This document shows, piece by piece, positions 8,599-58,933 of a stretch of DNA of 64,000 nucleotides (its first letter is position 1; each line of letters opens with the position of its first letter). The stretch is from Zootoca vivipara (lineage: Eukaryota). The position numbers were made by a program, and so were the translations under genes. The stretch lies in NCBI RefSeq assembly GCF_963506605.1, contig NC_083276.1, forward strand, positions 78,368,001-78,432,000. Direction: 5' to 3'. Under the pieces are notes generated by a model. It worked only from the letters and a program-made list of their open reading frames with translations. It was not told the DNA's origin and made no database searches.

Positions 8599-9488
8599 AC
8601 ATTTGTTCAGTTATCCAGACTATAACTGTAAGACTCAATATTTCAATGAACATAAAGATCAGTACAAAAGTAATGTTTTAAGAGGTCAACTTCAATCTGG
8701 GAAACCATTTTCCCCCCCTCTTATACTTCAAATTTTACACAATTAGTTCCTCAAAAAACAAAAACTTAAAATTCCTTTAACGTTCTCCCCATTGCACTTG
8801 TTACCTCCAGAATACATGGAGGGCACAACAATACAAAATTACAAGGGGGCAGAGTTTACTAGTACAAAAACAGACATGGACTATATGCCTATGCAAGCCT
8901 TGAAAAACTAGGGCCACATTAGCACAGGTACACTGGTACTACCTCTAGTCAGTTCACGAAACAGGTACAAAATTAACCTGAACAACTTCAAAAACCTACT
9001 GCTTCCATGTGGGGAGAAGGTTGTTTTTATGTACCAGCTCAACTCAGCATCTGCTCTTTTAAGATGTCTGTTAATGCCTAGCTATAGCCATAGTATTTAT
9101 TATTACTGAACAACAGATAAATCCTAATTATAAACATCACCCATTCAGTGACTTATCAGTGGTAAATCTTGCACAAATCAAGAAATAAGCTTCACATGAT
9201 CTTCTTAATTCTGATCATCATGAAACAGAGTTCCTTCACTCATTTTATATGCTAAAAAAATTACTTCATTTGCTGAGTTTTCAAAGATTCATTTATATGG
9301 ATTTTTTTTTAATTTTGCCCTGCTGAAAGTGTCAATTGTTTAAGAAGAGAGCATTAGTGTCACTCTAGAAACAAGGCAAAGGCAGACTTGTTTTCCCATT
9401 CAAGTATTGACATGAAATGAAGCCAAGGTCTGTGCATTGTGCTTTAACCCGCAGCATTTTTGAGATTTTATTGGGGGAGGGGAGGGGG

Positions 9489-9490
<2 letters not shown>

Positions 9491-9562
<72 letters not shown>
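9491..9562 (+). repeat. (GA)n microsatellite
   Basis: Seen directly. Confidence 0.95.
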
Positions 9563-9565
<3 letters not shown>

Positions 9566-10793: not shown

Positions 10794-10938
10794 TCAAAGT
10801 TCTTTCTCTCTGAGTTTATTCCCATTGTGCTCATCTGCCAGTACAGGATGTCCATCACCATTCCTTAAACAATTGTCCTTCCCATATTTATGTTCTTGCT
10901 TTTGCCTTCTTATCTCTTTATACCGTAAGGTGATATTT
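10794..10938 (-). CDS. PTDSS2: PTDSS2 exon 12 (coding part to TGA)
   Basis: [17 protein letters not shown]...NGDGHP...REKEL-stop. Confidence 0.92.
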
Positions 10939-40500: not shown

Positions 40501-43500
40501 TGGTAACATCAAGCCTTGAGGAACACTTTCTACCAATTTCTAAGGGGTGAATTAGTTTCCAAATGGCAAAATTCTGAGCACAGTCAGACAGACACTGCTG
40601 CAGCAACAGCCCATATGCCCGAACAAGGTGATCAAACTGACCTAAAAGAATGGCAAAGGTTGCAGTAAAAGTTACTCTGATAGCATTAGCACAAAAGCAT
40701 TCCTTCTGTCAATCTTTAGCTAAGTAAGGGATCACAACACTGCATTGGAAGCTTTCCTGTAAATAAAACAGCTTCTGAAAATACAATTGCCTTCTCACAA
40801 CTATACAGAAGCTTTGTATATAAATAATATGAGCACTGTAACCAACAGAACCACACTATTCATAATCAGTGTGCAGGACCACAATTTTTCAACTCAGAAG
40901 ACTGGATGTTGAGGCACAATTTTAAGGAATTTCAGTTACACAATACACGAAAGGTTATCAGAAAGGTTTGTTTCTCCACACTAAGTAACCAATACAAACA
41001 TGTCTGCAACTTTTCATGTACCAGCTTTCAGTAAACTCAAAACTCCTATTTATAAACACCCACATTCTCAGTTTCAAATATAAAAAGACTTTGTGTATTA
41101 TTCTAAGAGAATAAGTATGCAATGTATGTCACACAATTCACATGATGGGACTTCCCTTTCTTCTCCTGCTCACTATATCCCTCTGCATGCTCCCGAATCT
41201 GTTCTAGAGGATCCTCAAACTCTTCAGAGCAGATTGGAAGGCATACAGGCATTATAGAGTGTAAGGGGAATTCATTCCAGAAAGAGTGATGGATGATCAT
41301 CACTCAATAGTTTTCTTTATCTCTCATGGGCCACTTCACTAAACAGAGGGTCCAATATTCAACCATCATTTAACCAAGGAACAGAAAAGGCAAAAAAAAT
41401 ATCATCAATAGCAATAGTATACTTTGTTGAGATGGCAGCAATAAGGAATGGAAGAGGACATTCATGACCTAGCTTCTATGCAGAGATTACCACCAGTTCA
41501 GTAAGCTATGGTTTAATTTTGTAAAACTAGATTAGTTTTCTTTTGTGGCTCCTACATAAGGAAATGTGGTCCCCAAGTTATGTTCCATCCCATTTTCTGC
41601 AAGTCACAGAATGACAGCTGCTTGATAAACTCTTAAGTATGAAACGAAGGACAGGCAGAATCACCCCCAATGACTTATTTTCAGCATTGGGGCATTCTTC
41701 TCCCAGAAATCAATGACGTCCCAGCAACTTTGGGATGAAAACAAATAAAAGGTAAACCATGTGCTCTTTTGGTAGCATTTATCTTTAAAAACTTCTAATT
41801 CATTTCAATCATCTATATTAGAGTACAGCATAAAATTAAACTCAATGAGAGGAGAGGGCAGATTTTAGTAAACACACAAGAATCAATTTAAAGGAATCAG
41901 TAACAGGACAGCCACCTATGTCTAGATTAGTGTTTCCCAACAGGTGGTCCGCGGACCCCCAGGGGTCCGCGAGCTATGCCAGAGGGGTCCGCACCGCTGC
42001 CCAGCGCTGCCTGGGGCTGCTTCCCGCGTCCGCAGGGAGGGTGTAGTTCAGCACGGCTACTGATTGGCTGCAGGAAGCGCCAATCAGAAGGGGCAGCCAA
42101 TCAGAAGGGGCAGGAAAGAAGTCTCCGCCCAGGCGAGGGAGGGGAAGGCTGGCCGGCAGGAAGAGCGAACCGGAGCGTGGGAGTGTGCGGAGGAATACAG
42201 CGCCGCGCCCCGCCGCGCCCGAGAGGACATTTCCTGGCGCGCGCCTCCGTCCTGGTTCCCTTGGGGATGATGGGGACGAGGGAGCGCCCTTCCCCGCCAG
42301 GGCCTTCGGGAGCTGCGTGCCGGTTCGGCTGCCTTTGGTCCTCGCAGAGGCTGCAATGCACGGCCTGGCGTGCGTGGCGGCGGCGGCTCCGCGGCCTCCC
42401 TCCCACCCGCCAGCTGCGTGCCTCAGCTCCCGCCAGTAGCAGACAGAGCGCAAAGCTCTTCCCGGCCCCGCATCACTCTCCTCTTCCCTGGTAGCTCCCA
42501 ACCCTCTGCAGGAGACTCTCCCGAAGGGGCAGGAGGAGCAAAAGGGAGCCCAGCGCCCCACTTTCCTGGGAATGGAAGAAGATGAGTTCGCCTTCAAAGT
42601 GAGCACTTCTTCCATCTTCCATTGCTGCTCCTGAGCCGTACAGAAAAAGTTTGAACGCCAAGAAGGTTTAAAAAATGTATTCTGTGTTTTTACTTGTAAC
42701 CAGGCAGTTTATATTTTCTTCTGTGGCTGTTCTCCTATGACAGGGTGTTTTTATGTTAATTTGCACATGCATTTCCACCAATTATGAAAACTATTTACTG
42801 TATGATATCATAAATACTAATGTCGATCTGATTCTCAGGGAGCTGTACCACTATAGGAGAGCTATGAGCTGCCTTGCTGGAATCTAAGTAAAAAAATTCC
42901 TTCCAGCAGCTCATACCAAAATAAAAAACTTAGTTGGTCTTTAAGGTGCTGCTGGAAGGAATTTTTTTTATTTTGTTTCGACTACGTCAGACCAACACGG
43001 CTACCTACCTGAAATCTAAGGTTTGTAGGTGCACAAAAATATTTTGAAAACAGCTGCCTTGGGGTTAGAATCATAGAGTTGGAAGAGACCACAAGGGTCA
43101 TCTAGTCCAACCCCCTGCAGTGCAGGAACCATCTCTAAACAAATTAATGGGGGTCCTTGTCACAATAGTAGCTCGATGTGGGGTCCTTGAGAAAATTTTG
43201 TTGGGAACCCCTGGTCTAGATAAACAAGCCATTTCCCAGCACTTTCCAGAAGTCCTTATGAAAAACAAAGTCATTTGACAATGGTTAATTGATTATTCTG
43301 TAAAAACAGCAGAGCTAAAAGAATTTGAGGGTTGCTCCAGAAGTTCTGGCGCAACTCTCAACAGTACACAGATAACCTCCCAACTTCTCCTTCATGTACT
43401 TCTGAAGTAGTTCACTTGGGGCCAAACAAGAAGTTATGTCAGAAGAAGTGAATTACAATAATGCAAAGCCCCTACAAAATGGGGTGGCAGCACTGATGGG

Positions 43501-46500: not shown

Positions 46501-48552
46501 AAATGCTTGAGAGATTTTTTCAAAGTTTTCAGGAAATTTCGTCTCTCCCAGTGAAACTAAGGACACTGAGTTGATACTTAATTAAATAACCAGATTTCCA
46601 ACTAACATCATGTTGTTTGCTAGAAAATAATTTGCCTTCTCAAGAATTGCACAAAAAGAAAAAGTTACACCCAATGTGGAGGAAGAAAAGAACCATCATT
46701 CTGGGTATTGCATTACAAGGCTAACAACTGTAATGGAAAGAATACTGTGGCACATTAAAGATATAAAGCAAGTGGAATAAATAAAGACACAAAGTGGAAA
46801 AATATACAAGAATTAGTGATGCCACAATTACTATATCTTCGTGGGCAGGTATTGTGCTATATCTTTTGTTCTTGTGTAGGCTTTTCATGGCAAAAGAATT
46901 TATTATTCTTTTTGTCTTGAAGATGGTTTTGATACAGTCTTTTTTCATACTGTCTCAACAATAACAAAGTACAGTACAGTATGGCTTTGCTTTTAGGTGT
47001 GCATCAGGACAAGTAAAGTTTTAACCAGTTCTGTTTGAGAATATAATAAACTAAACAAGGTAGTCATGATAAGTCTAAAGGAGAAAAATAACAGCACACA
47101 AGTGCACATCTACTTCATCAGATATGGAAATGTTGAGGTCTGTCAATCCTTTTTTACTATAGATGAAAAATTACCTACTAATATGTAGTTACAGGTAGGT
47201 AGCCGTGTTGGTCTGTATCTGAAGAAGTGTGCATGCACACGAAAGCTCATACCAAAATAAAAAACTTAGTTGGTCTTTAAGGTGCTGCCGGAAGGAATTT
47301 TTTATATTTTGTTTCTACTAGTATGTAAATATTAGTAAATATTCCGCCTCCATCTCTTCACGAGACTGCTCAACTACAAAAGTCACACTATCTTTCATCA
47401 CCTGTGTCTACAAAACCTTATATTTTTTGTAGTACAAATGCTGGAGTAGTAGAATGATATCTGGAATACTATCACAAACCATTAAGCAAGGGCACTTAGA
47501 GAAGTGCTCTCCCTCTTCTCTACAAACTGCCCAGGCAAGTATTCTCTTGAGATAAGGAGATGAAAGTGTGGTTTTGCCTTTCAACTACCACAAGTAGGTT
47601 GTGCCTAGGAAAGCTATCCCACAAGAGTGCAATTGAAGCAAGATCAAATGTATTTACTCTGAAATTAAGTCTAACTGAATTAAACAGGATATATTTCCAA
47701 GTATGCATGGGAAAGCAGCCTCAGTTCCTTCTTGGTGCTGTAAATTACAGATATTTCTCAGAGATTTTGCTATATCAAATACTTATCAAGCCAGGAATGG
47801 TGGAAAAAAGCCAACAGTAAATATAAAGCATATTTACTCAGCAGTAAGTCGTACATGATATTTACTCAACAAGTGTGTTTAGGAATGTAACACTAATGAC
47901 TTCCCCCGACTGACCGCAAAAGCTGAGGAGAGAAACCAAAAGAGGGCCAATTCTTAAGAGAAGGCACAGCAGAAGTGACTTGAGAAAAGAGGCAGGTTCA
48001 GCAGGGCTCCTGGGACGGAGACATCCAGGAAGAGAAGACCCGCCAAATTCCAACGAGATGCACACCCTTCTTTATATCCTCGGCTCCAGCATCAAGTTCA
48101 ACCCGCTCACTCCCTCCTCCTTGTTGGTCCCTAGCCTTTTAAACGGACAGCCTGCCTACCCGCATCTTTAGTTGTGCATACACGCGTCTATTTACTGTGG
48201 GCAACCCGTGTCTATGGGCTGCGCCGTTTCCTTCCACGTGTCAGGAGGAAAGGGCCTTGGGGAAGAGAGGCGACCAGGGGGAAAGGACACGGGGCGCCCT
48301 GCTCCGGCCCCCTTACCAGAAGAACGTGTTGGTCCCGTCATCGTACACCTCGGACTCCGTGCTTCGCCGGCTCCCGTGCGTCGCGGTAGAACCAGTGGTG
48401 GTCGTGGGGGCGGCAGCGCCCTTACAGCGCCCCGGCGAAACCTCTGCCACGGGGGGAGAAGCCCCGTTGGGCTCCGCCGGCGGCTGCTCCTCTTCCTCCA
48501 GGGCTGCTTTTCCAGTGCCCCCTCCGTGACCTCTCCGCTCGGTGCGCCTCAT
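10794..48552 (-). CDS. PTDSS2: Phosphatidylserine synthase 2, 12 coding exons (join of the exons listed below), 499 aa
   Basis: Exon translations match vertebrate PTDSS2 ([68 protein letters not shown]). Exon lengths 236/102/83/68/135/51/114/119/115/146/186/145 sum to 1500 with consistent phases and GT-AG boundaries. Confidence 0.97.
11747..11932 (-). CDS. PTDSS2: PTDSS2 exon 11
   Basis: [44 protein letters not shown]...WRFFI; 186 nt. Confidence 0.95.
12414..13287. mobile_element. Tc1/mariner (Tc2-like) non-autonomous transposon
   Basis: TIR CCGTATAT(A/G)CTGGCGTATAAGACG; TA flanks. Confidence 0.8.
15314..15347 (+). repeat. (AAT)n microsatellite
   Basis: Seen directly. Confidence 0.9.
19636..19781 (-). 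CDS. PTDSS2: PTDSS2 exon 10
   Basis: [48 protein letters not shown]; 146 nt. Confidence 0.95.
20782..20896 (-). CDS. PTDSS2: PTDSS2 exon 9
   Basis: [38 protein letters not shown]; 115 nt. Confidence 0.95.
21272..21616 (+). mobile_element. Sauria SINE
   Basis: Full head and tail; TSD TATCCCTCTA. Confidence 0.9.
22916..23034 (-). CDS. PTDSS2: PTDSS2 exon 8
   Basis: [39 protein letters not shown]; 119 nt. Confidence 0.95.
23811..23924 (-). CDS. PTDSS2: PTDSS2 exon 7
   Basis: [38 protein letters not shown]; 114 nt. Confidence 0.95.
25464..25509 (+). repeat. (GA)n microsatellite
   Basis: Seen directly. Confidence 0.95.
25871..25921 (-). CDS. PTDSS2: PTDSS2 exon 6
   Basis: [17 protein letters not shown]; 51 nt. 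Confidence 0.95.
27335..27469 (-). CDS. PTDSS2: PTDSS2 exon 5
   Basis: [45 protein letters not shown]; 135 nt. Confidence 0.95.
28076..28554. mobile_element. hAT MITE (same TIR family as 138-227) with an internal palindromic repeat array
   Basis: TIR (T/C)ATAGCTGCCAAGT; 8-bp TSD GCTATAGG. Confidence 0.85.
28580..28685 (+). mobile_element. Short PLE pLTR insertion, hammerhead stem II deleted
   Basis: GTATCTGAAGAAG...CTCATACCAA...CAGACCAACATGGCTACCTACCTGTA; 15-bp TSD ACTAGAACTAATAGT at 28565-28579 and 28686-28700. Confidence 0.85.
28707..28842. mobile_element. Palindromic MITE
   Basis: Long inverted arms TGGCCAAACTTGGCCCTCCAGCTGTTT...GGACTACAA. Confidence 0.75.
29307..29374 (-). CDS. PTDSS2: PTDSS2 exon 4
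   Basis: [22 protein letters not shown]; 68 nt. Confidence 0.95.
32984..33164. mobile_element. Tc2-like MITE
   Basis: Imperfect TIRs with TA flanks; repeated AATCTAATGCAC motif. Confidence 0.6.
33245..33951 (+). repeat. Perfect 60-bp direct repeat (33245-33304 and 33892-33951) flanking PTDSS2 exon 3
   Basis: GAAATCACATTCTACCTAGGGGATACAGGCTATGAAACATAGGTTACTACTTTCAACATT occurs twice. Confidence 0.9.
33384..33466 (-). CDS. PTDSS2: PTDSS2 exon 3
   Basis: [27 protein letters not shown]; 83 nt. Confidence 0.95.
37085..37300 (-). mobile_element. CR1-like LINE 3' fragment
   Basis: CATAAGAAGAGCC...CAGACCAAAG...CATCCTGTTCTCAC pattern typical of an antisense CR1 tail. Confidence 0.5.
37753..37993. 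mobile_element. Tigger/TcMar-like MITE
   Basis: TA-CAGTGGTACCTC...GAGATACCACTA-TA termini; internal TAACCTGAAG repeats. Confidence 0.75.
38560..38803 (+). mobile_element. RTE-BovB 3' fragment
   Basis: Matches the 3' end of 1812-3178; CAA tail. Confidence 0.85.
39168..39269 (-). CDS. PTDSS2: PTDSS2 exon 2
   Basis: [33 protein letters not shown]; AG/GT boundaries; 102 nt. Confidence 0.95.
39689..39726 (-). ncRNA. Minimal hammerhead ribozyme (inverted copy; sense to the PTDSS2 pre-mRNA)
   Basis: Reverse complement GTAT-CTGAAGA-A-GTGTGTATGCACAC-GAAA-GCTC-ATAC; core intact, one change in stem II. Confidence 0.75.
40316..40353 (+). ncRNA. Minimal hammerhead ribozyme
   Basis: Identical core and stems to 54501-54538. 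Confidence 0.8.
42889..43012 (+). mobile_element. Short PLE pLTR/leader insertion with a 22-nt inverted 5' piece
   Basis: AGCTCATACC...CAGACCAACACGGCTACCTACCTG; TSD AATCTAAG at 42881-42888 and 43013-43020. Confidence 0.85.
43066..43130 (-). mobile_element. CR1 LINE 3'-end fragment
   Basis: Reverse complement ends CTTCCAACTCTATGATTCTA. Confidence 0.65.
44895..44992 (+). mobile_element. Old degenerate PLE pLTR/hammerhead fragment
   Basis: ATCTGATGAA...GTCCATGAAA...CTTTAAACTGCCA has the same layout as the PLE HHR and leader, but decayed. Confidence 0.5.
47188..47320 (+). mobile_element. Short PLE pLTR insertion with intact hammerhead (47215-47252) and an inverted tail segment
   Basis: Inverted GTTACAGGTAGGTAGCCGTGTTGGTCTG joined to the forward HHR. 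Imperfect TSD CTACTA(A/G)TATGTA at 47175-47187 and 47315-47327. Confidence 0.85.
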
Positions 48553-48860
48553 GACAAGGACGGCTGGTTGCAGGCAGGAAGGCGGCGGGGAGAGAACGGC
48601 GACTCAAGCGACGCCCCGCGCGCATAAGGCGGGCCCCTCCGCGCGCCCCATCTGAGAGGAAGAGGCGAGCCCAAAGAGCAACAGCGCGCTCCGGAGTTCA
48701 CATACGGCGTTTCATCACCGCTTGCTCGTGACCCTACGTAGGCCGGGGTCGAGGGGCGGCTCCGCGCTCGCGGAAGGCGTGATTCGCTGCCGAGGCGGTG
48801 CGCGTGCGCAGTCGGGGGCGGCAGCATGAACTCCACAAGCGAGGGCGGGGGGGGGGAGAC
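48200..48860 (-). promoter_or_regulatory. CpG island / promoter of PTDSS2
   Basis: CpG-dense, GC-box-rich sequence (GGGCGG) spanning exon 1 and the upstream region. Confidence 0.8.
48317..48552 (-). CDS. PTDSS2: PTDSS2 coding exon 1
   Basis: ATG at 48552; MRRTERR...[11 protein letters not shown](W); donor TG|GTAAGG. Confidence 0.95.
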
Positions 48861-49102
48861 AAAATGGGGCGTGGTTTTTTTTGTGTGTGTCTTTTGCTCG
48901 TGGGCGAAGAGCGGTCTGTTATGCTCTTCTAGTCCCGCCCCTACAGCTTTTAGATAAGTTAAAAGTCAAAGTTGTAGCCGTGCGCTTGCATGTTTTGAAG
49001 CAAGTTCCACGGCGGACAGTGGGAGCTACAAAGAGAGAGAGAGAGAGCCCCGTGGTATCCTAAAGGCGAAGACGTTTTATTATGGTGGGCTAGAATCTTT
49101 AA

Positions 49103-49932
49103 GGACGCGGGTGGCGCTGTGGGTTAAACCACAGAGCCTAGGCAGAAGGTCGGCGGTTGAATCCCTGCGACGGGGTCAGCTCCCGTTGCTCGGTGGTCCC
49201 AGCTCCTGCCAACCTAGCAGTTCGAAAGCACGTCAAAGTGCAGGTAGATTAATAATAATAATGATAATTTATTTATACCCCGCCCATCTGGCTGGGTTTC
49301 CCCAGCCACTCTGGGCGGCTTCCAACAGAAATATTGTTGTTTAGTCGTGTCCGACTCTTCGTGACCCCATAGACCAGAGCAGGCCAGGCACTCCTGTCTT
49401 CCGCTGCCTCCCGCAGTTTGGTCAAACTCATGTTCGTAGCTTTGAGAACACTGTCCAACCATCTTGTCACAGAAATATTAAAATACACTAATTTCTTAAA
49501 TATTAAAAGCTTCCCTAAACAGGGCTGCCTTCAGAGGTCCTCTAAAAGTCTGGTAGTTATTTTTCTTTTTGACATCTGGTGGGAGGGTGTTCCACAGGGC
49601 GAGTGCCACTACCGAGAAGGCCCTCTGCCTGGTTCCCTGTAACTTGGCTTCTTGCAGCGAGGGAACCGCCAGAAGGCCCTCGGCCTCGGCACTGGACCTC
49701 AGTATCCGGGCAGAGCGATGGAGGTGGAGACGCTCCTTCAGGTATTCTGGTACCGCTACAGTGGGAAGATAAATGGCGTTTCCGTGTGCTGCTCTGCTTT
49801 GCCAGAAGCGGCTTTGTCATGCTGGCCACATGACCTGGTAGCTGTACGCCATCTCCCTCGGCCAACGCGAGATGAGCGCCGCAACCCCAGAGTCAGTCAC
49901 GACTGGACCTAATGGTCAGGGGTCCTGACCAT
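49103..49932 (+). mobile_element. Sauria SINE interrupted by an antisense L2-like fragment (~49249-49748), itself interrupted by an antisense BovB 3' end (49336-49468)
   Basis: SINE halves are contiguous across the insert. Outer TSD TAGAATCTTTAA; inner TSD ACAGAAATATT. Confidence 0.8.
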
Positions 49933-51607
49933 TAGAATCTTTAAACCAAGTTCTGTGGATTTTGCCGCGAAGGACTAAAACGGCTTCCCCGCTGGGAAAT
50001 GGGAGTTTTGTCCTTGGAAAACAAACTGATCCTAAAACTTGTTGGTACGGAAGGAAGTCCCACCTATTTCAAAATGGAGGAAAATCTCATGTTACCATAA
50101 CAACAGCTTATTAAGCAAGTAGAGAAGGGTCTTCTGTAACTAGGTGGTGGGAGCATAGGGCCACTTTTGAGATCAAGTATTTTGGGTACACATAATAGAA
50201 ATCTGTTAAAGTGTCAAAAGCTGACCTGCCGACTTCCATCCTGGATCACAGATTTCACTACCATTTGTCTCCCACCATACAGTAAGGTTATGTCATGTAT
50301 AGCACAGTCTTATGCAGCCAACTTAGAAATAAGGTGCTTGGAAATTAAACAGGGTCTGCTGATTTCTCTTTAAGGTTTCCAGACTCAAAAGAGAGCAAGG
50401 CAATTAAAGGCACAGAAGTCCTGTCCTCTATTGAGACTGGCAACCCTACAGGTTTCATCCCTGTGTCTCCCCCCCACCCTGTTCTGACCCATTATCTATC
50501 CTTGCCCCCTTTTCGCCCCCCCAATCCCCCCCAGGCAGGCCCCTACCTCCACTTGGCGTAGTCTGGAAAGCGGCCTAGTCTGCTGCGGCCTATTCAGTCT
50601 GCTGGGCAATGTTGGGCCTTGTTGCTGCAAAAGGCGTGTTTTCAGTTGGTTGCTGTGGAATTTTGAGATGTCATCCGGTGGTGCGGCTTTGGAGGCAGCA
50701 GCGTGCTATCTGCCTTTCTGTTGGATGCTGCTGGAGTCTTCAGAGCTTCTGCTGGTGATGTCTAATTTGTGCACCACTTTTTGTGTTTAATCATTATTTT
50801 AGGTGTGAAAGGTGTGGGTTTTTAAATAATTTTTTAATGCTAGATACCTCCCTGATGGGCAAGGTGCGTTGTGCCCAAATTTGTTGCAATGCGGTTCAGC
50901 GGTTATGGTGAAAGGCTGGGACATCTACGCACGCAATGCCTACATTTATGTATATATAGATTTATTAAAATTAAAATAAAAGCATGCATGAAAAGAGATG
51001 TACCTAGGGTCCCTTGCACCCTGGACAAAAATATGTATTGGTGCCCCCCCAGTCCCTTGTGCTCCTCCCTGGGGTGCCCAAGGGAGCCTGCATGCTTCAC
51101 CTGGCTGCCCATAACAGCAAAGGAACAGTTTGGGGAGTAGGCGGGCTCCTAGCAACTCCGAGCCAGAGCGGACAGACACGGTTTTAGCGGGCCTGCACCC
51201 TTGGCAGGGGCCAACCTGGCCAACCCCTAGATACGCCCCTGTGCATAAAATAACATGATGGGTGCCTTTGGGATGTGTTTTAGAAATATCACAAACCTCA
51301 AGAGGCCAGTATGTGCGTCAGCTTCCTAACACACACTTGCCCAGCCATTCTCTTCAATACACATGCACGAGTTTCCATGTATAAAAAGTTAACATGAGAA
51401 TCAGTGCGTACACACACACACAAGTCAGATAGAACAGGTTCTTCTTTTTGCACTCACCTCTGACTCAGCAATCTCACCTATAGCACACTAAAATCAAAGG
51501 GGCCTCCAGCTTCTTCAATTTGCTTTTGGAGCTACCCCTTAAAAGCATTAGCATCCAAATACGAGAACACTATTATGCACAGTCATTACCTACCTGTAAC
51601 CAGAACT

Positions 51608-54313
51608 ATGGAAGGCACCACATTGAGCCGCATGAAATGGAAGTCCATCAACCTCACCAAGAAACTTGCCCAGGTACAAACTGACATCCTCTTTCTATCT
51701 AAATGCAAAAACCTGGACATTGTACCTAAGGGTCTTAGAATTAAGAACCCTCTTCAATCAACTTATCCCACAGAATATGCCAGAAAACTATGCCACACTT
51801 TATCTAAGAAACTGCTGAAACATCTTATCGGCGTTCTGTATTCCAAACAGAAGTTAATAAAGGAGGAACTCTCTGCACTGGAGAACTCCATCAGGAATCA
51901 CCCGGCCTGGCAGAAGTTCCACAAGGAAAAACAAACAATTTACCACTCTCAACTGGAGTTACTGAAGAACCAGAAAAATAAAAAACTCTGCAACCTTTCC
52001 AACCTACAGGCCACCAATCAAAACAAGATCAACAACATTGTCAATCTTTCACAGCAAACACTCAGCCCAGCTGAGGAATCCGTCCTTTCACGGGGACTAT
52101 CATTCTGCCCTGCCAAATCCCAACACATGATTCAGTTCTGCGGGGACCTGGAAGCATTTTTCCGCCGTTTACGCCTGAAGGAGTATTTTCATCACACACA
52201 AGAACAAGACAAAGTAGAACAAACTACATCCCCACAACACAACACCTCTCAACTTACTGGGGAACAACCATCACCCTCCAAACGCATCAATGAACAGAAC
52301 ATTGACCACCAACTACCACCGAAAAGAAGTTACACAAAAAGGGACTCCACATGGACCCCTCCTGATGGACGCAATACCACACTAGATCTGTACATCGAAT
52401 GCTTCCGCCACAGAATCCAAACGGATGTGACCAGAAAACACCATCGCTTACAACAAAATCTAAACCATGCTGAAAGGAGAGCCATAGAAAATCTCAGGAA
52501 CAACCCAGACATTATAATTAAAGAGGCAGACAAGGGTGGAGCTGTCGTCATCATGAACAAAACTGATTACATCCAAGAGGCCCACAGACAACTTTCCAAT
52601 ACTGCCTTTTACATGAAATTGGACTCAGACCCCACACAAGCATACAAAAAAGAACTGAACAAGATTATTAAGGAGCTACCCCTACACATCCAAGAACAGA
52701 TCCTCACAAACACACCAGCGGAACCTCGGCCAGGAACTTTCTATCTTCTACCCAAAATACACAAACCAGGAAACCCAGGACGCCCCATCATCTCAGGTAT
52801 TGGCACCATTACAGTGGGTGTTTCCGGCTATATGGACTCTGTTCTGAAACCATATGCTATCAGTGCTCCCAGCTACGTACGTGACACCACAGATTTTCTG
52901 AGGAAAATACAATATTTGAACAATCTTCCTAACAATACTATACTAGCCACTATGGATGTGGAATCTCTATATACCAACATCCCACACAATGATGGTTTAC
53001 AAGCCATAAGGAACACCATTTCAGATAAAACCACAGCGGACTTTGCTACCAAACTCTGCCACTTTGTCCTTACCCACAACCACTTCAAATTTGGTGATGA
53101 CCTGTTCCTCCAGATCAGCGGCACAGCCATGGGCACCCGCATGGCCCCACAGTATGCCAACATCTTCATGGCAGATTTAGAACAACGTTTCCTTAACTCC
53201 TACCCACTCAAACCTCTCCTGTACCTGCGATACATTGACGATATTTTTATTATCTGGACACATGGACAACAGACCCTGGAAACCTTCCACCAGACATTCA
53301 ATGACTTTCACCCCACCATCAACCTAACAATGAACCAATCTATGCAAGAAATACATTTTTTGGACACTACTATAAAAATACAGGATGGACGTATAGACAC
53401 CACCTTATACAGAAAACCAACTGACCGACAAACATATCTACATGCTTCTAGCTACCATCCCAAACATACCAAACAATCCATCGTATACAGCCAGGCCTTA
53501 CGTTACAACCGCATCTGTTCCAACTCTACAGACAGAGAATCTCACCTAAGAGATCTACAGCAAACCTTTTTAGAACTAAAATATCCACCTGATGAAGTTA
53601 AACAACAGATCAACAGAGCCAGACAGATACCTAGAGAGAACCTGCTGCAAGACAGACCCAAAAAAGAAAATAACAGAACACCACTAGTCATCACATACAG
53701 CTCCCAAGCTAAAACAGTACAACGCATCATCAGAGATCTACAGCCTCTCCTGGACAATGACCGCTCCCTTTCTCAAGCTCTGGGAGGAAGACCTTTCATT
53801 GCCTACAGACAGCCACCCAATCTTAAACAACTCCTCACCCACAATAATACAACCACCAGACTTAACATGGACACTGGTACCAGAGCCTGCAATAAACCCA
53901 GATGCCAACTTTGCTGCCACATACACCCAGACAACACCATTACTGGCCCCAACAACATCCAACATACCATCTCAGGACTATTTAATTGCTCATCCTCTAA
54001 CATTGTGTATGCCATCAAATGCCAACAGTGCCCTTCAGCTCTCTATATTGGACAAACAGGCCAAACCCTACGCCAAAGGATAAATGGACATAAATCTGAC
54101 ATCAGGAACCAGAAGACAGAAAAACCAGTAGGAGAACACTTCAATCTCCCAGGACATTCTATACAAGATCTCAAAGTAGCTGTCTTACTACAAAAGAATT
54201 TCAGAAATAGACTGGAAAGAGAAGTTGCTGAATTGCAACTTATCACCAAGCTCAAAACCATGGAGGGACCTGGTTTGAACAGAGATATCGGGTTCTTATC
54301 TCATTATACATGA
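51608..54313 (+). CDS. PLE reverse transcriptase + GIY-YIG endonuclease, copy 1 (901 aa)
   Basis: ADKG motif; RT motifs LPKIHK, GRPIIS, MDVESLYTNIP, GTAMG, YIDD; Cys linker CNKPRCQLCC; [15 protein letters not shown]...LYIGQT...RINGH. No stops or frameshifts. Confidence 0.95.
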   Translation: MEGTTLSRMKWKSINLTKKLAQVQTDILFLSKCKNLDIVPKGLRIKNPLQSTYPTEYARKLCHTLSKKLLKHLIGVLYSKQKLIKEELSALENSIRNHPAWQKFHKEKQTIYHSQLELLKNQKNKKLCNLSNLQATNQNKINNIVNLSQQTLSPAEESVLSRGLSFCPAKSQHMIQFCGDLEAFFRRLRLKEYFHHTQEQDKVEQTTSPQHNTSQLTGEQPSPSKRINEQNIDHQLPPKRSYTKRDSTWTPPDGRNTTLDLYIECFRHRIQTDVTRKHHRLQQNLNHAERRAIENLRNNPDIIIKEADKGGAVVIMNKTDYIQEAHRQLSNTAFYMKLDSDPTQAYKKELNKIIKELPLHIQEQILTNTPAEPRPGTFYLLPKIHKPGNPGRPIISGIGTITVGVSGYMDSVLKPYAISAPSYVRDTTDFLRKIQYLNNLPNNTILATMDVESLYTNIPHNDGLQAIRNTISDKTTADFATKLCHFVLTHNHFKFGDDLFLQISGTAMGTRMAPQYANIFMADLEQRFLNSYPLKPLLYLRYIDDIFIIWTHGQQTLETFHQTFNDFHPTINLTMNQSMQEIHFLDTTIKIQDGRIDTTLYRKPTDRQTYLHASSYHPKHTKQSIVYSQALRYNRICSNSTDRESHLRDLQQTFLELKYPPDEVKQQINRARQIPRENLLQDRPKKENNRTPLVITYSSQAKTVQRIIRDLQPLLDNDRSLSQALGGRPFIAYRQPPNLKQLLTHNNTTTRLNMDTGTRACNKPRCQLCCHIHPDNTITGPNNIQHTISGLFNCSSSNIVYAIKCQQCPSALYIGQTGQTLRQRINGHKSDIRNQKTEKPVGEHFNLPGHSIQDLKVAVLLQKNFRNRLEREVAELQLITKLKTMEGPGLNRDIGFLSHYT

Positions 54314-54500
54314 TAAGCGATCTTCAGCCATCTCAACCCTTGCTTTTTCATGCAAAACCATTTGCAGTCGTTTGCGGTCATCAACAGCTATCAGTCAGTC
54401 AATCACCCATTTCCACCACCCTTCTGAGTGATCCCCCCTCCCCATCCCCACCCCTCCCCACCCCTTCTCTACATAAGTGCCTGGAAACTTCCATTTCACT

Positions 54501-54538
54501 GTATCTGAAGAAGTGTGCATGCACACGAAAGCTCATAC
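54501..54538 (+). ncRNA. Minimal type I hammerhead ribozyme (PLE pLTR); predicted cleavage after C54534
   Basis: GTAT-CTGAAGA-A-GTGTGCATGCACAC-GAAA-GCTC-ATAC: CUGANGA/GAAA core, stem I GUAU/AUAC, stem II hairpin, vestigial palindromic stem III (AGCU). Confidence 0.85.
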
Positions 54539-54637
54539 CAAAATAAAAACTTAGTTGGTCTTTAAGGTGCTACTGAAGGAATTTTTTTATTTTACTTCGA
54601 TCCAGACCAACACGGCTACCTACCTGTAACCAGAACT

Positions 54638-57343
54638 ATGGAAGGCACCACATTGAGCCGCATGAAATGGAAGTCCATCAACCTCACCAAGAAACTTGCC
54701 CAGGTACAAACTGACATCCTCTTTCTATCTAAATGCAAAAACCTGGACATTGTACCTAAGGGTCTTAGAATTAAGAACCCTCTTCAATCAACTTATCCCA
54801 CAGAATATGCCAGAAAACTATGCCACACTTTATCTAAGAAACTGCTGAAACATCTTATCGGCGTTCTGTATTCCAAACAGAAGTTAATAAAGGAGGAACT
54901 CTCTGCACTGGAGAACTCCATCAGGAATCACCCGGCCTGGCAGAAGTTCCACAAGGAAAAACAAACAATTTACCACTCTCAACTGGAGTTACTGAAGAAC
55001 CAGAAAAATAAAAAACTCTGCAACCTTTCCAACCTACAGGCCACCAATCAAAACAAGATCAACAACATTGTCAATCTTTCACAGCAAACACTCAGCCCAG
55101 CTGAGGAATCCGTCCTTTCACGGGGACTATCATTCTGCCCTGCCAAATCCCAACACATGATTCAGTTCTGCGGGGACCTGGAAGCATTTTTCCGCCGTTT
55201 ACGCCTGAAGGAGTATTTTCATCACACACAAGAACAAGACAAAGTAGAACAAACTACATCCCCACAACACAACACCTCTCAACTTACTGGGGAACAACCA
55301 TCACCCTCCAAACGCATCAATGAACAGAACATTGACCACCAACTACCACCGAAAAGAAGTTACACAAAAAGGGACTCCACATGGACCCCTCCTGATGGAC
55401 GCAATACCACACTAGATCTGTACATCGAATGCTTCCGCCACAGAATCCAAACGGATGTGACCAGAAAACACCATCGCTTACAACAAAATCTAAACCATGC
55501 TGAAAGGAGAGCCATAGAAAATCTCAGGAACAACCCAGACATTATAATTAAAGAGGCAGACAAGGGTGGAGCTGTCGTCATCATGAACAAAACTGATTAC
55601 ATCCAAGAGGCCCACAGACAACTTTCCAATACTGCCTTTTACATGAAATTGGACTCAGACCCCACACAAGCATACAAAAAAGAACTGAACAAGATTATTA
55701 AGGAGCTACCCCTACACATCCAAGAACAGATCCTCACAAACACACCAGCGGAACCTCGGCCAGGAACTTTCTATCTTCTACCCAAAATACACAAACCAGG
55801 AAACCCAGGACGCCCCATCATCTCAGGTATTGGCACCATTACAGTGGGTGTTTCCGGCTATATGGACTCTGTTCTGAAACCATATGCTATCAGTGCTCCC
55901 AGCTACGTACGTGACACCACAGATTTTCTGAGGAAAATACAATATTTGAACAATCTTCCTAACAATACTATACTAGCCACTATGGATGTGGAATCTCTAT
56001 ATACCAACATCCCACACAATGATGGTTTACAAGCCATAAGGAACACCATTTCAGATAAAACCACAGCGGACTTTGCTACCAAACTCTGCCACTTTGTCCT
56101 TACCCACAACCACTTCAAATTTGGTGATGACCTGTTCCTCCAGATCAGCGGCACAGCCATGGGCACCCGCATGGCCCCACAGTATGCCAACATCTTCATG
56201 GCAGATTTAGAACAACGTTTCCTTAACTCCTACCCACTCAAACCTCTCCTGTACCTGCGATACATTGACGATATTTTTATTATCTGGACACATGGACAAC
56301 AGACCCTGGAAACCTTCCACCAGACATTCAATGACTTTCACCCCACCATCAACCTAACAATGAACCAATCTATGCAAGAAATACATTTTTTGGACACTAC
56401 TATAAAAATACAGGATGGACGTATAGACACCACCTTATACAGAAAACCAACTGACCGACAAACATATCTACATGCTTCTAGCTACCATCCCAAACATACC
56501 AAACAATCCATCGTATACAGCCAGGCCTTACGTTACAACCGCATCTGTTCCAACTCTGCAGACAGAGAATCTCACCTAAGAGATCTACAGCAAACCTTTT
56601 TAGAACTAAAATATCCACCTGATGAAGTTAAACAACAGATCAACAGAGCCAGACAGATACCTAGAGAGAACCTGCTGCAAGACAGACCCAAAAAAGAAAA
56701 TAACAGAACACCACTAGTCATCACATACAGCTCCCAAGCTAAAACAGTACAACGCATCATCAGAGATCTACAGCCTCTCCTGGACAATGACCGCTCCCTT
56801 TCTCAAGCTCTGGGAGGAAGACCTTTCATTGCCTACAGACAGCCACCCAATCTTAAACAACTCCTCACCCACAATAATACAACCACCAGACTTAACATGG
56901 ACACTGGTACCAGAGCCTGCAATAAACCCAGATGCCAACTTTGCTGCCACATACACCCAGACAACACCATTACTGGCCCCAACAACATCCAACATACCAT
57001 CTCAGGACTATTTAATTGCTCATCCTCTAACATTGTGTATGCCATCAAATGCCAACAGTGCCCTTCAGCTCTCTATATTGGACAAACAGGCCAAACCCTA
57101 CGCCAAAGGATAAATGGACATAAATCTGACATCAGGAACCAGAAGACAGAAAAACCAGTAGGAGAACACTTCAATCTCCCAGGACATTCTATACAAGATC
57201 TCAAAGTAGCTGTCTTACTACAAAAGAATTTCAGAAATAGACTGGAAAGAGAAGTTGCTGAATTGCAACTTATCACCAAGCTCAAAACCATGGAGGGACC
57301 TGGTTTGAACAGAGATATCGGGTTCTTATCTCATTATACATGA
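54638..57343 (+). CDS. PLE reverse transcriptase + GIY-YIG endonuclease, copy 2 (901 aa)
   Basis: Same protein as copy 1 except one visible difference, T->A (NSTDRE vs NSADRE; A53528 vs G56558). Confidence 0.95.
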   Translation: MEGTTLSRMKWKSINLTKKLAQVQTDILFLSKCKNLDIVPKGLRIKNPLQSTYPTEYARKLCHTLSKKLLKHLIGVLYSKQKLIKEELSALENSIRNHPAWQKFHKEKQTIYHSQLELLKNQKNKKLCNLSNLQATNQNKINNIVNLSQQTLSPAEESVLSRGLSFCPAKSQHMIQFCGDLEAFFRRLRLKEYFHHTQEQDKVEQTTSPQHNTSQLTGEQPSPSKRINEQNIDHQLPPKRSYTKRDSTWTPPDGRNTTLDLYIECFRHRIQTDVTRKHHRLQQNLNHAERRAIENLRNNPDIIIKEADKGGAVVIMNKTDYIQEAHRQLSNTAFYMKLDSDPTQAYKKELNKIIKELPLHIQEQILTNTPAEPRPGTFYLLPKIHKPGNPGRPIISGIGTITVGVSGYMDSVLKPYAISAPSYVRDTTDFLRKIQYLNNLPNNTILATMDVESLYTNIPHNDGLQAIRNTISDKTTADFATKLCHFVLTHNHFKFGDDLFLQISGTAMGTRMAPQYANIFMADLEQRFLNSYPLKPLLYLRYIDDIFIIWTHGQQTLETFHQTFNDFHPTINLTMNQSMQEIHFLDTTIKIQDGRIDTTLYRKPTDRQTYLHASSYHPKHTKQSIVYSQALRYNRICSNSADRESHLRDLQQTFLELKYPPDEVKQQINRARQIPRENLLQDRPKKENNRTPLVITYSSQAKTVQRIIRDLQPLLDNDRSLSQALGGRPFIAYRQPPNLKQLLTHNNTTTRLNMDTGTRACNKPRCQLCCHIHPDNTITGPNNIQHTISGLFNCSSSNIVYAIKCQQCPSALYIGQTGQTLRQRINGHKSDIRNQKTEKPVGEHFNLPGHSIQDLKVAVLLQKNFRNRLEREVAELQLITKLKTMEGPGLNRDIGFLSHYT

Positions 57344-57530
57344 TAAGCGATCTTCAGCCATCTCAACCCTTGCTTTTTCATGCAAAACCATTTGCAGTCG
57401 TTTGCGGTCATCAACAGCTATCAGTCAGTCAATCACCCATTTCCACCACCCTTCTGAGTGATCCCCCCTCCCCATCCCCACCCCTCCCCACCCCTTCTCT
57501 ACATAAGTGCCTGGAAACTTCCATTTCACT

Positions 57531-57568
57531 GTATCTGAAGAAGTGTGCATGCACACGAAAGCTCATAC
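57531..57568 (+). ncRNA. Minimal hammerhead ribozyme, second unit; predicted cleavage after C57564
   Basis: Identical to 54501-54538. Confidence 0.85.
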
Positions 57569-58933
57569 CAAAATAAAAACTTAGTTGGTCTTTAAGGTGC
57601 TACTGAAGGAATTTTTTTATGCACAGTCAATTATGGCCTGAATTAATCATTATGCTAAGTACTCTGCTAAGTAGGCCCCCTGCCAAATGGGGGTTCTTGT
57701 GATGCTCTAATTATCTGGGAGCTTTCCCAATATGGAGAGTATACCCATATTGATGCTTGTATTGCAGCCTTTTAAAATTCCCTGTGGTTTGGAACAGGAT
57801 AGCTATTATTTTATCACAAGAAAGCGTGCCAAATCTGTAGTGGGTGGGAATTGAATATTGAGAGCCTGGTTGGCACAAGCAGTAGAATTCTTTGAACTGC
57901 AGGAGGCTGCGTGCCTGGCTGCATATATCTATGTCCCATTTTTATATATGAACACTGACCAGGTAGAAAGGGTTACTCAGAAATTTGGAGCCCTAAAAGA
58001 TAGTTCAGCTTTTCATCTGGCCATATTCCATTCCACTTGGTTTGTTAAATTATTTGTTTTACAAAATTCATACAGTACATTGTTTAAAGAAAACCTCATA
58101 ATGGTTTACAAAGAGCAGCAAGGCCTAAAAGGTGAAATTCAAAAGTGTGGGGGGTAAATATTTACATATGCAGGGTAATCCAAATCATATGGGAACTCAG
58201 AATTCAAAACCATATCCCCCCCCCCCCCAAAAAATCCAAGCCTGTGGCCAAGAGTTGCAAGATCCTGTGATTGCCATCTAAGGCCCTTCTCTCTGTGTCC
58301 TCCACAGAAGGGCCAGAGGGTGTCAACATGAGAATAATTGTTTTTAGTGGTGGCTCCCCACTTGTGGAATACACTTCCCTGATATGTTTCCCTGGGCCCA
58401 TGTTTATCTACATTTAGGCACCAGCCAAAGCTTTCCTTTTTACCTGGCTTTTTGTGCCTGAATTTGAAAGGTTTTCATTGCTTTTTTGGTTTTTTATAAG
58501 TTTATTTATATGCTGGCAGACAAACTTGACATTCATACATACATATAACAATTAAACCTAAAGAGTGAAAAAATTATAGTAAAAGGATGTTAATACACAA
58601 AACAGAAAAAACAATATTAACAATATTAACAAAAAAGAAAAAGAAAATAATAATTAAAGTAAACACATATCTCAAAAATAAGTGATATATGTAATCAAAT
58701 TTCATATCCATTTTCTTAGGTTTTCATTGGTTTATTCATTCTAAGTGATTTCAATGCTTATATTTTGTTGTGAGTTAGTTTGGGCCATTTTTGTGAGTAA
58801 AGCAACTAATAAATATTAATAATATATAAAAAAATGAGTGTGTTGCACAAGAGTAGCTAAGCCAGGGCCAGACCTAGCATTAGGCAAACCAAAGCAGCCG
58901 CCTCATGAGTAGATGCTGGTTTATGGGTCTTTA

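What the first reader, a model, noticed from the sequence alone, without database searches (positions are those of the whole stretch)
51587..57620. Intact ribozyme-punctuated Penelope-like dimer inserted in one event: footprint of a circular or multimeric RNA template
Seen: two head-to-tail units with a 3030-bp period, both with open 901-aa RT-GIY-YIG ORFs and only one visible amino-acid difference. One TSD (TTATGCACAGTCA) brackets the whole dimer. The insert is exactly two units minus 26 nt. The 26-nt segment 54591-54616 occurs only at the internal junction, and similar sequence occurs in independent fragments at 28.6, 40.4 and 43.0 kb. A monomer with these two ends could therefore not produce the dimer by simple duplication. 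Established: PLEs often form partial tandems with pLTRs, and their pLTRs carry minimal hammerheads. Inference: the two ribozyme cuts (after 54534 and 57564) would release an exact unit-length RNA containing the whole ORF, with 5'-OH and 2',3'-cyclic-phosphate ends that could be ligated into a circle. Almost two rounds of reverse transcription around such a circle would give this structure. The locus is also a candidate active source element and a candidate compact RT-endonuclease tool.
Basis: partly seen in the sequence, partly recalled or inferred. Interest (0 to 1): 0.85.

Follow-up and report, generated by a model that had tools for sequence, protein, structure and literature searches.

The report
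Young two-unit Penelope-like retrotransposon insertion
This is a real, very young, intact two-copy insertion of a Neptune-type Penelope-like retrotransposon, but its odd junction is the already described Penelope "tail" and the circular-RNA idea was published in 2014, so it is a clean example of a known kind, not a new mechanism.

Summary
51587-54590 and 54617-57620 are head-to-tail copies (period 3030) with one difference. Both carry an open 901-aa RT + GIY-YIG frame. One 13-bp duplication (TTATGCACAGTCA) brackets the pair, and a minimal hammerhead with predicted cuts after 54534 and 57564 sits in each unit.

The junction-only 26 nt are part of a 40-nt segment (54591-54630) that matches the known Penelope "tail", the stretch between two alternative reverse-transcription start sites (Frangieh 2024). 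Other copies in the window and loose ends in reads and contigs end at 54589-54593 or 54630-54633. The dimer's 3' end is the upstream site. Its 5' end keeps the last 14 nt of the tail.

The seamless inner junction shows one event on a template continuous over about two units. Whether that template was a linear multi-unit transcript (current model) or a ribozyme-made circle cannot be decided here. The circle idea was already proposed (Cervera and de la Peña 2014).

Two RNA runs show no pile-up of ends at the ribozyme cut, very low depth over the ORF and no locus-specific reads. Short family copies start at about 54501, upstream of the cut, so their templates were uncleaved.

Verdict: new member of a known kind, modest interest. 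The scan's first readers noted a similar layout elsewhere in this genome.

The parts
51573..51585 (.). Left copy of the 13-bp target-site duplication TTATGCACAGTCA
   Evidence: found only here and at 57617 in the window
51586..51586 (+). One extra T at the 5' junction that does not match the element (C at 54616)
51587..51600 (+). Last 14 nt of the tail (TACCTACCTGTAAC) at the 5' end of the insert, a 5' partial tail
   Evidence: the same 14-mer ends the copy at 28674-28687
51608..54313 (+). ORF of unit 1, 901 aa plus stop, RT + GIY-YIG. No terminal repeat or promoter lies upstream of it
54470..54477 (+). TATA-like box TACATAAG, 24-31 nt upstream of the family's common 5' end at about 54501 (repeated at 57500)
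   Evidence: the 5'-end cluster at 54500-54507 is, table 7
54501..54538 (+). Minimal type-I hammerhead of unit 1: helix I GUAU/AUAC, CUGAAGA, bulged A, palindromic helix II GUGUGCAUGCACAC, GAAA, helix III reduced to the self-complementary AGCU. Predicted cut after C 54534
   Evidence: no Rfam match
54554..54611 (+). Predicted stem GUUGGUCU (54554-54561) / AGACCAAC (54604-54611) that encloses the upstream 3'-end site
   Evidence: (third fold); the fold as a whole is no better than shuffles
54591..54630 (+). The 40-nt tail between the two alternative 3'-end (RT start) sites, 54590 and 54630.
   Evidence: copies end at either site; table 7 (loose ends at 54589-54593 and 54630-54633)
54638..57343 (+). 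ORF of unit 2, 901 aa plus stop. Carries the private G at 56558 (Ala641)
   Evidence: table 3 (A in every X1 and X12 contig laid there and in the 9 RNA reads of X23; X22 has none)
57531..57568 (+). Hammerhead of unit 2, predicted cut after 57564
57617..57629 (.). Right copy of the TSD. Its first 4 nt (TTAT) are also the last 4 nt of the element, so the insert ends at the upstream (tail-less) start site

Best explanation
This is a very young Neptune-type Penelope-like element inserted in a single target-primed reverse-transcription event as 1.99 units. Shown: there is one 13-bp TSD, two near-identical 3030-nt units and a seamless inner repeat region. The 3' end lies at the upstream one of the family's two recurrent 3'-end sites, and the 5' end keeps the last 14 nt of the 40-nt tail. 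Inferred: the enzyme nicked an AT-rich target and started cDNA internally on the RNA at the upstream start site, helped by a 4-nt TTAT overlap with the target. It then copied a linear RNA that ran through two ORFs and the inner repeat. That RNA would be a read-through transcript of a source array of three or more repeat regions, as in the Frangieh 2024 model. Synthesis stopped 5 nt before the next predicted stem, which leaves two units minus 26 nt. On this reading the hammerheads are passengers of the repeat region and were not needed for the event. The roughly 90-130-nt copies that dominate the family would be by-products of the same internal start, acting on the repeat region at the 5' end of transcripts that begin near 54501.
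For: Dimer, TSD and single difference. RT and GIY-YIG domains. DKG, YIDD, the C-x4-C-xx-C linker and the two cysteines between IVY and YIG. Two 3'-end sites: in the window, the dimer and the inverted arm 39635-39746 end at ...TTTTTAT or TAATAT, while the copies at 28.6, 40.4 and 43.0 kb end at ...CTACCTG(TAAC), 40-44 nt further on. In reads and contigs, loose ends 'behind' cluster at 54589-54593 and 54630-54633 (table 7). This matches the published tail and the two internal RT start sites of an Anolis Poseidon element (PMC11167929; PMC8557442). Distances from the ribozyme cut are 56 and 96 nt here. For the downstream site of the Anolis element I derive about 85-92 nt from that paper's text. 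Uncleaved templates: common 5' ends at 54500-54507 lie upstream of the cut at 54534 (table 7; copies at 28580 and about 47214). No pile-up of RNA ends at 54534/54535 (table 6). The published model of a multi-copy mRNA and of ribozyme-independent insertion in vitro. A steep 5'-truncation gradient in contig depth is typical of target-primed copying (table 2).
Against: No source array of three or more units was seen; the genome could not be searched. A linear model has a regress problem: each copy lacks whatever lies 3' of the start site and 5' of the transcription start. This dimer therefore has no unit that owns both a promoter and a complete downstream start region. Arrays would have to regrow by unequal exchange, or another route would have to exist. 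The 5' end falls inside the 40-nt tail, about 1.3% of the unit if truncation were random, which hints at a programmed stop that I only infer. The two RNA runs are of unknown tissue and only about 6% of each was read.
Confidence: 0.6

Rival explanations
1. Rolling-circle reverse transcription. A transcript carrying both hammerheads is cut after 54534 and 57564 equivalents. The 3030-nt RNA is ligated into a circle, and the enzyme starts at its usual internal site and goes almost twice round.
For: The geometry fits: the two predicted cuts are exactly 3030 nt apart and enclose a whole ORF. Helix III is reduced to the palindrome AGCU, as the dimer-dependent minimal hammerhead model requires (PMC4209133). 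The family's common 5' end at about 54501 puts a hammerhead at the very 5' end of a repeat-driven transcript, so a transcript from 54501 through 57620 would hold both ribozymes. A circle would restore a complete start region and so solve the regress problem of linear templates. The only inter-unit difference is a private change in unit 2 (table 3). The published hypothesis.
Against: The insert ends do not coincide with the ribozyme cuts (56 and 82 nt away). There is no pile-up of RNA ends at the cut in two RNA runs (table 6), and none was found in Anolis. Ribozyme mutants did not affect insertion in vitro, and unprocessed RNA was the dominant substrate. Minimal hammerheads cleave poorly in vitro. 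Short family copies retain sequence upstream of the cut, so their templates were uncleaved. A circle's junction cannot be told from the genomic tandem junction, so no positive evidence is possible from these data.
Confidence: 0.13
2. End-to-end template jumping between ribozyme-processed, unit-length linear RNAs. The enzyme reaches the 5'-OH end at 54535 and continues on the 3' end (57564 equivalent) of another molecule, giving a seamless junction without a circle.
For: Contigs of run X1 show many independent junctions between an RT start site and the common 5' end: 54625-54630 joined to 57529-57532, and in table 5c 54630 joined to 54501. Table 5c also shows one or two filler letters at joints into 54500/54501, such as TA at 54630 to 54501. 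This shows that the family's enzyme does join templates (tables 5 and 5c).
Against: Those junctions sit at the start site and the 5' end near 54501, not at the ribozyme cut. No insertions or deletions at 54534/54535 reach the listing threshold (table 4). The objections to ribozyme processing are the same as for the circle.
Confidence: 0.07
3. Assembly artefact: a monomer, or reads from several loci, wrongly assembled into a dimer.
For: 3-kb near-identical repeats of a family with thousands of copies are hard to assemble. No long read was available. The G at 56558 is absent from all X1 contigs (table 3).
Against: The inner junction carries 26 nt that are absent from both ends but match the family's tail, so a monomer with these ends could not be expanded into this sequence. 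The right junction is held without differences in an X1 contig (table 8). Contigs drop rare variants, so the missing G means little. A first-reader note reports a similar two-unit layout of about 6.26 kb elsewhere in this genome (unchecked).
Confidence: 0.04
4. Two successive insertions, a later tandem duplication, or a jump from the RNA's normal 5' end (about 54501) to the internal start site of a second RNA.
For: Penelope endonucleases can target their own repeat region. Junctions between a start site and the common 5' end are common in the family.
Against: There is no second TSD at the inner junction. Unequal exchange cannot create a 26-nt segment that the monomer lacks. A jump from 54501 to 54630 would duplicate about 130 nt at the junction, whereas the inner region is a single seamless copy with an exact 3030 period.
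Confidence: 0.02

Closest known systems
Poseidon_Ac (PAc), Penelope/Poseidon-clade element of Anolis carolinensis, characterised in vitro (Frangieh et al. 2024, PMC11167929)
   Same: Tandem or partial-tandem units with pseudo-LTRs. A hammerhead in the repeat region. Two adjacent internal RT start sites whose spacing gives the 30-40-bp tail. Start sites in an AC-rich region some tens of nt downstream of the ribozyme cut. AT-rich targets. Fold-back copies consistent with extension of both strands.
   Different: Here the linker carries C-x4-C-xx-C, which is absent from Penelope/Poseidon. The hammerhead lies about 100 nt upstream of the ATG instead of overlapping it. Both end sites lie upstream of the ORF (site 2 is 8 nt before the ATG) instead of 111-118 nt inside it. 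No biochemistry was done here.
Neptune clade of endonuclease-bearing Penelope-like elements (Arkhipova 2006, as summarised in Craig et al. 2021, PMC8557442)
   Same: DKG motif, C-terminal GIY-YIG with the two cysteines between GIY and YIG, an extra CX2-5CxxC linker, pseudo-LTRs, a tail, fold-back insertions and a vertebrate host.
   Different: Clade placement rests on the linker motif only. No phylogeny was made, and Nematis also has such a linker.
Circular-RNA, more-than-unit reverse-transcription model for Penelope-like elements (Cervera and de la Peña 2014, PMC4209133)
   Different: It remains a hypothesis. This locus adds a clean example with exact coordinates but no RNA evidence.
Animal non-LTR retrozymes (tandem hammerhead units of about 170-400 nt expressed as circular RNAs; PMC7761336; Li et al. 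2026 preprint, 10.64898/2026.07.22.740005)
   Same: The family's roughly 130-nt units (54501-54630) occur in tandem in run X1 contigs and carry the same hammerhead (tables 5 and 5c). This fits the view that retrozymes derive from Penelope repeat regions.
   Different: The unit here is a 3030-nt coding element. The junctions of the short arrays sit at the RT start site and the 5' end, sometimes with filler letters. No circular RNA was shown.

Membership tests
Penelope-like elements with endonuclease (EN+ PLE) | Reverse transcriptase domain with the PLE-diagnostic DKG motif | tested here: met
   Pfam RVT_1, E 3.8e-12. DKG at residue 308 and YIDD at about 542. 1230 homologues at E <= 0.001 among the 8000 scored candidates; the 120 listed nearly all carry RT-associated Pfam families.
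Penelope-like elements with endonuclease (EN+ PLE) | [quoted passage not shown] | tested here: met
   Pfam GIY-YIG, E 5.9e-05, residues 799-840. [17 protein letters not shown], followed by histidines.
Penelope-like elements with endonuclease (EN+ PLE) | Tandem or partial-tandem units forming pseudo-LTRs, often with fold-back copies | tested here: met
   Dimer of period 3030. Fold-back insertions at 39635-40447, 42889-43012 and about 47188-47300.
Penelope-like elements with endonuclease (EN+ PLE) | A 30-40-bp tail present at only some ends, reflecting two internal RT start sites | tested here: met
   A 40-nt segment, 54591-54630. Copies end at either side of it. Loose ends cluster at 54589-54593 and 54630-54633.
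Neptune clade | CX2-5CxxC zinc-finger-like linker between RT and EN (absent in Penelope/Poseidon) | tested here: met
   C-NKPR-C-QL-C at about residues 760-769. The criterion is taken from PMC8557442.
Neptune clade | Phylogenetic placement of the RT among named Neptune elements | not tested
   No clade-labelled reference sequences were at hand. The best named relatives are unlabelled turtle proteins at 61-70% identity.
Minimal type-I hammerhead of Penelope repeats (min-HHR, Cervera and de la Peña 2014) | CUGANGA, helix II, GAAA, UH cut site, helix I, and helix III reduced to a short palindrome | tested here: met
   Descriptor hits at cuts 54534 and 57564 plus three other copies, against 0.005 by chance. 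The minimum-energy fold gives helices I and II. AGCU is self-complementary. There is a bulged A 5' of helix II, as described in PMC4209133.
Rfam hammerhead families | Match to a curated covariance model | tested here: not met
   No match at gathering score over the window, and none at E up to 10 over 51000-58200. My reading is that the missing helix III explains this.
Minimal type-I hammerhead of Penelope repeats | Self-cleavage in vivo or in vitro | tested here: inconclusive
   No pile-up of read starts or ends at 54534/54535 in two RNA runs (table 6). However, most reads there come from fragments embedded in other transcripts, and 5'-OH ends are poorly sampled.
Retrozyme-like circular-RNA elements | Unit-length circular RNA | not testable with these tools
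   The circle junction is identical to the genomic tandem junction. No RNase R or long-read RNA data were on offer.

The most novel reading that the evidence does not exclude
An autonomous, protein-coding Penelope-like element replicates through a ribozyme-excised, ligated 3030-nt circular RNA. Its rolling-circle reverse transcription from the usual internal start site yields multi-unit insertions such as this one. That would also explain how the element regenerates complete repeat regions, which linear templates cannot carry.
Probability: 0.13. Interest if true: 0.75.

Novelty: new member of a known kind. Interest (0 to 1): 0.3.

Why it matters
The role of hammerheads in Penelope-like elements and the origin of their tandem layout are still open (PMC7761336 calls the ribozymes' in vivo role 'a mystery'). 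This locus does not settle either question.

It is, however, an unusually clean specimen. It has two intact ORFs, an unambiguous TSD, one end at each landmark of the tail and a seamless inner junction. The family is large and apparently recently active, and it reproduces in a Neptune-type element the two-start-site signature so far shown biochemically only for an Anolis Poseidon element. That makes the family a reasonable second system for testing linear versus circular templates.

As a 'compact RT-endonuclease tool' it is not a new idea, since the Anolis element has already been purified and assayed.

Tried and rejected
- Rfam at gathering score and at E up to 10 found no hammerhead. The corrected one did.
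- Single-strand folds of the hammerhead and tail regions are no better than shuffles (z -0.75, +0.43, +0.04), so the predicted stem 54554-61/54604-11 is only a lead. A co-fold of two hammerhead copies prefers a 14-bp trans duplex of the palindromic helix II. That says nothing about catalysis.
The distribution of 5' ends and unit numbers genome-wide could not be tabulated.
- The PDB sequence search found no relative.
The empty allele and the whole dimer could not be tested, and I chose 54300-58000.
- No long-read run was on offer.
- Run X12 (organism B) has no depth on the flank, so presence or absence of this insertion there is unknown.
- Copy numbers from contig depth are rough ratios only: about 8,000-12,000 over the ORF 5' part and 1.2-1.5 million over the hammerhead-tail region, against 27.7 on the flank.
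- The AATAAA at 54542 is not conserved in older copies, and I did not pursue it.
- I built no consensus and repaired nothing.
Full report
**1. What is in the sequence**

A direct repeat of period 3030 runs from 51587 to 57620. 51587-54590 equals 54617-57620 over 3004 nt with a single mismatch, 53528 A versus 56558 G. Tandem Repeats Finder misses it only because its longest period is 500.

Each unit holds an open frame of 901 codons, 51608-54313 and 54638-57343. The ORF list gives 912 aa for the first because an ATG inside the flanking duplication is in frame by chance. The one nucleotide difference changes Thr641 (ACA) to Ala641 (GCA).

TTATGCACAGTCA occurs twice in the window, at 51573-51585 and 57617-57629, directly flanking the repeat.
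- At the left end, one unmatched T (51586) separates it from the element.
- At the right end, its first four letters TTAT are also the last four letters of the element.
- The repeat span is 6034 nt, which is 2 x 3030 - 26.

**2. What kind of element it is**

- Pfam finds RVT_1 and GIY-YIG in both frames.
- The protein has DKG at residue 308 and YIDD.
- It has a C-x4-C-xx-C linker ahead of the endonuclease, and two cysteines between IVY and YIG.
- According to Craig et al. 2021 (PMC8557442), DKG and the CCHH finger mark endonuclease-bearing Penelope-like elements. The extra CX2-5CxxC linker is present in Neptune and Nematis but absent in Penelope/Poseidon.

I therefore call it Neptune-type, on that motif alone. 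No phylogeny was made.

The best named relatives are turtle proteins at 61-70% identity. One unnamed 585-aa protein from a Logan assembly is 95% identical. No solved structure is related by sequence.

**3. The ribozymes**

Rfam finds no hammerhead at gathering score or at E up to 10. By eye, 54501-54538 reads as follows:
- helix I, GUAU/AUAC;
- the core CUGAAGA, followed by a bulged A;
- a palindromic helix II, GUGUGCAUGCACAC;
- GAAA;
- a helix III reduced to A-GC-U, followed by the cleavage-site C.

The predicted cut is after 54534, and after 57564 in unit 2. The minimum-energy fold gives helices I and II.

A descriptor with these elements hits only five places in the 64 kb. All five lie in copies of this family: cuts after 40349, 47248, 54534 and 57564 on the plus strand, and 39693 on the minus strand. 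Shuffles give 0.005 hits on average.

This is the 'min-HHR' of Cervera and de la Peña 2014, including the bulge 5' of helix II and the palindromic AGCU that lets two copies build helix III in trans (PMC4209133). The two cuts are 3030 nt apart and enclose ORF 2.

**4. The 26 nt**

The 26-mer 54591-54616 occurs once in the window, and related sequence occurs in other family copies. Aligning those copies shows what the segment is.

- Copies ending 40-44 nt downstream of the dimer's end, at ...CAGACCAACACGGCTACCTACCTG(TAAC), the equivalent of 54630:
  - 28580-28687, with a 13-bp TSD;
  - the direct arm 39750-40447;
  - 42889-43012.
- Copies ending at ...TTTTTAT or TAATAT, the equivalent of 54590:
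  - the dimer itself;
  - the inverted arm 39635-39746.

The family therefore has two alternative 3' ends, and 54591-54630 is the segment between them.

Reads and contigs say the same. Loose ends 'behind' cluster at 54589, 54593, 54630 and 54633 in the two RNA runs, and at 54593 in run X1 (table 7).

This is the published Penelope 'tail', a 30-40-bp extension present at only some ends (PMC8557442). Frangieh et al. 2024 traced it to two adjacent internal start sites of reverse transcription in an AC-rich stem-loop (PMC11167929).

The dimer has no tail at its 3' end and the last 14 nt of the tail at its 5' end (51587-51600). The remaining 40 - 14 = 26 nt are therefore seen only inside. The start sites lie 56 and 96 nt from the ribozyme cut here. 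From the paper's text I derive about 85-92 nt for the downstream site in the Anolis element.

**5. One event, continuous template**

A single TSD and the lack of any second duplication at the inner junction argue for one insertion.
- Unequal exchange or duplication of a monomer with these ends cannot create the 26 nt.
- A jump from the family's usual RNA 5' end to the start site of another RNA would duplicate about 130 nt at the junction. Such joints exist elsewhere in the genome: 54625-54630 joined to 57529-57532, and 54630 joined to 54501 with the filler letters TA. Table 5c lists one or two fillers at other joints into 54500/54501 (tables 5 and 5c).
- The inner region of this dimer is a single seamless copy.

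The template therefore ran uninterrupted from the 54617 equivalent, through one repeat region, to the 54590 equivalent two units on.

**6. Linear multimer or circle**

Nothing in the sequence decides this. The ends of the insert do not coincide with the ribozyme cuts.

Points against ribozyme processing:
- The common 5' end of the family's short copies is 54500-54507. This is seen as loose ends 'before' in both RNA runs (table 7) and in the copies starting at 28580 and about 47214. That is upstream of the cut, so those templates were uncleaved.
- A TATA-like TACATAAG sits 24-31 nt upstream (54470-54477), so I infer a transcription start near 54501.
- No pile-up of read starts or ends occurs at 54534/54535 (table 6).
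- In the Anolis system, ribozyme mutants did not change insertion, unprocessed RNA was the dominant substrate, and no reads began or ended at the cut.
- Minimal hammerheads cleave poorly in vitro.

Points for a circle:
- Linear templates lose whatever lies 3' of the start site and 5' of the transcription start.
- In this dimer, ORF 1 has a complete start region downstream but no promoter. ORF 2 has a promoter but no tail downstream.
- A transcript from 54501 to beyond 57570 would hold both ribozymes. Cutting and ligation would restore a complete unit.

That point is an argument, not evidence, and arrays can also regrow by unequal exchange between 3-kb repeats. I put the linear read-through template at about 0.6, the circle at about 0.13, and end-to-end jumps between processed linear units at about 0.07.

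**7. Prior art**

The circle model is not new. The Discussion of Cervera and de la Peña 2014 proposes that the ribozymes cleave the precursor and that the ends may be ligated into circular RNAs. These would serve as templates for more-than-unit retrotranscription, which would explain the head-to-tail tandems.

The multi-copy mRNA model is in Frangieh 2024. A 2026 preprint links animal retrozymes to Penelope repeat regions.

**8. Age and activity**

One difference in 3004 nt between the units means a very recent insertion; a single difference could even be a copying error. The G at 56558 is private to unit 2. Every X1 and X12 contig laid there and all nine RNA reads of X23 read A; X22 had no reads there (table 3). 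Contigs drop rare variants, so this does not disprove the G.

Contig depth in run X1 gives rough ratios only, not copy numbers:

| Region | Summed contig depth |
|---|---|
| ORF 5' part | about 8,000-12,000 |
| ORF 3' part | about 1 million |
| Hammerhead-tail region | 1.2-1.5 million |
| Unique flank | 27.7 |

This is the 5'-truncation gradient of a very large family (table 2).

RNA depth over the ORF is only about 0-9 in most of its length, rising to a few tens (up to about 120) over its last 500 nt, and it is zero on the right flank. In addition, 82-89% of what was laid runs on into unrelated sequence. Most RNA signal therefore comes from fragments embedded in host transcripts, and this locus itself is not seen to be expressed (tables 1 and 2). 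The tissue is unknown and only about 6% of each run was read.

**9. Limits**

- No long-read run was on offer.
- Only one read-laying run of at most 6000 letters was allowed, so the dimer as a molecule and the empty allele remain untested.
- An X1 contig spans the right junction without differences (table 8), but that run may come from the assembled individual.
- First-reader notes from other windows of this genome are unchecked leads that agree with the picture. They mention another layout of about 6.26 kb with a 3030-nt unit, tandem 138-nt hammerhead units, fold-back insertions within 13-bp TSDs, and a TATA box ahead of a hammerhead.

**10. Verdict**

The '26-nt footprint' is the known tail. 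This is a new member of a known kind, with interest 0.3.

Noticed in passing
window 28580-28687 (TSD 28567-28579 / 28688-28700): A 108-nt copy of the family with a perfect 13-bp TSD (TAGAACTAATAGT). It starts at ATCTGAAG (the 54503 equivalent), ends at the downstream start site (...CCTGTAAC), and has most of helix II deleted. It looks like a full-length copy of a short RNA running from the repeat's transcription start to the internal RT start.
   Followed up: partly
window 39635-40447 (TSD TCCACAGACAGA at 39623 and 40448): A fold-back insertion. The inverted arm 39635-39746 ends at the upstream start site, and the direct arm 39750-40447 ends at the downstream one, so both 3' ends face outward inside one 12-bp TSD. 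Both arms carry a hammerhead. This fits extension of both nicked strands, as reported for the Anolis element.
   Followed up: partly
window 42889-43012 and about 47188-47300: Two more small fold-back copies. One has a 21-nt inverted piece joined a few nt upstream of the ribozyme cut, with an 8-bp TSD (AATCTAAG). The other has a 28-nt inverted tail piece joined to GTATCTGAAG, and its TSD of about 13 bp has one mismatch.
   Followed up: partly
run X1 contigs laid on window 54300-58000 (tables 5 and 5c): Many independent joints from 54625-54630 to 57529-57532 (equivalent to 54499-54502); at 54630 to 54501 the joint carries the filler letters TA. These are tandem arrays of the roughly 130-nt hammerhead-tail unit and look retrozyme-like. 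Their boundaries sit at the RT start site and the RNA 5' end, which points to repeated template joining and away from a purely circular origin.
   Followed up: partly
run X12 ('organism B'), contig on window 54670-56449: A second labelled organism holds a 1780-nt stretch of the ORF with a single difference. The family is near-identical in two labelled taxa, which could mean very recent shared activity, close kinship or transfer. The flank of this locus has no depth in that run.
   Followed up: no
window 54516/54582 (table 5): RNA reads (64 in X22, 8 in X23) join 54516 to 54582 on opposite strands. This is a transcribed fold-back copy of the hammerhead region somewhere in the genome.
   Followed up: no
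window 54542-54547 and 57572-57577: An AATAAA lies between the ribozyme cut and the upstream start site in this young subfamily, where older copies read AATGACAAAC. If it is used as a poly(A) signal, transcripts would end before the RT start sites.
   Followed up: no
window 48001-50000: This is the most G+C-rich 2-kb bin of the window (0.576, against about 0.35-0.50 elsewhere), just upstream of the insertion. It may be a CpG island or an exon.
   Followed up: no
window 52001-58000: There is a strong strand asymmetry over the element: GC skew -0.25 to -0.34 and AT skew +0.15 to +0.26. The unit has 1044 A, 862 C, 663 T and 461 G. The sense strand is A/C-rich and G-poor.
   Followed up: no
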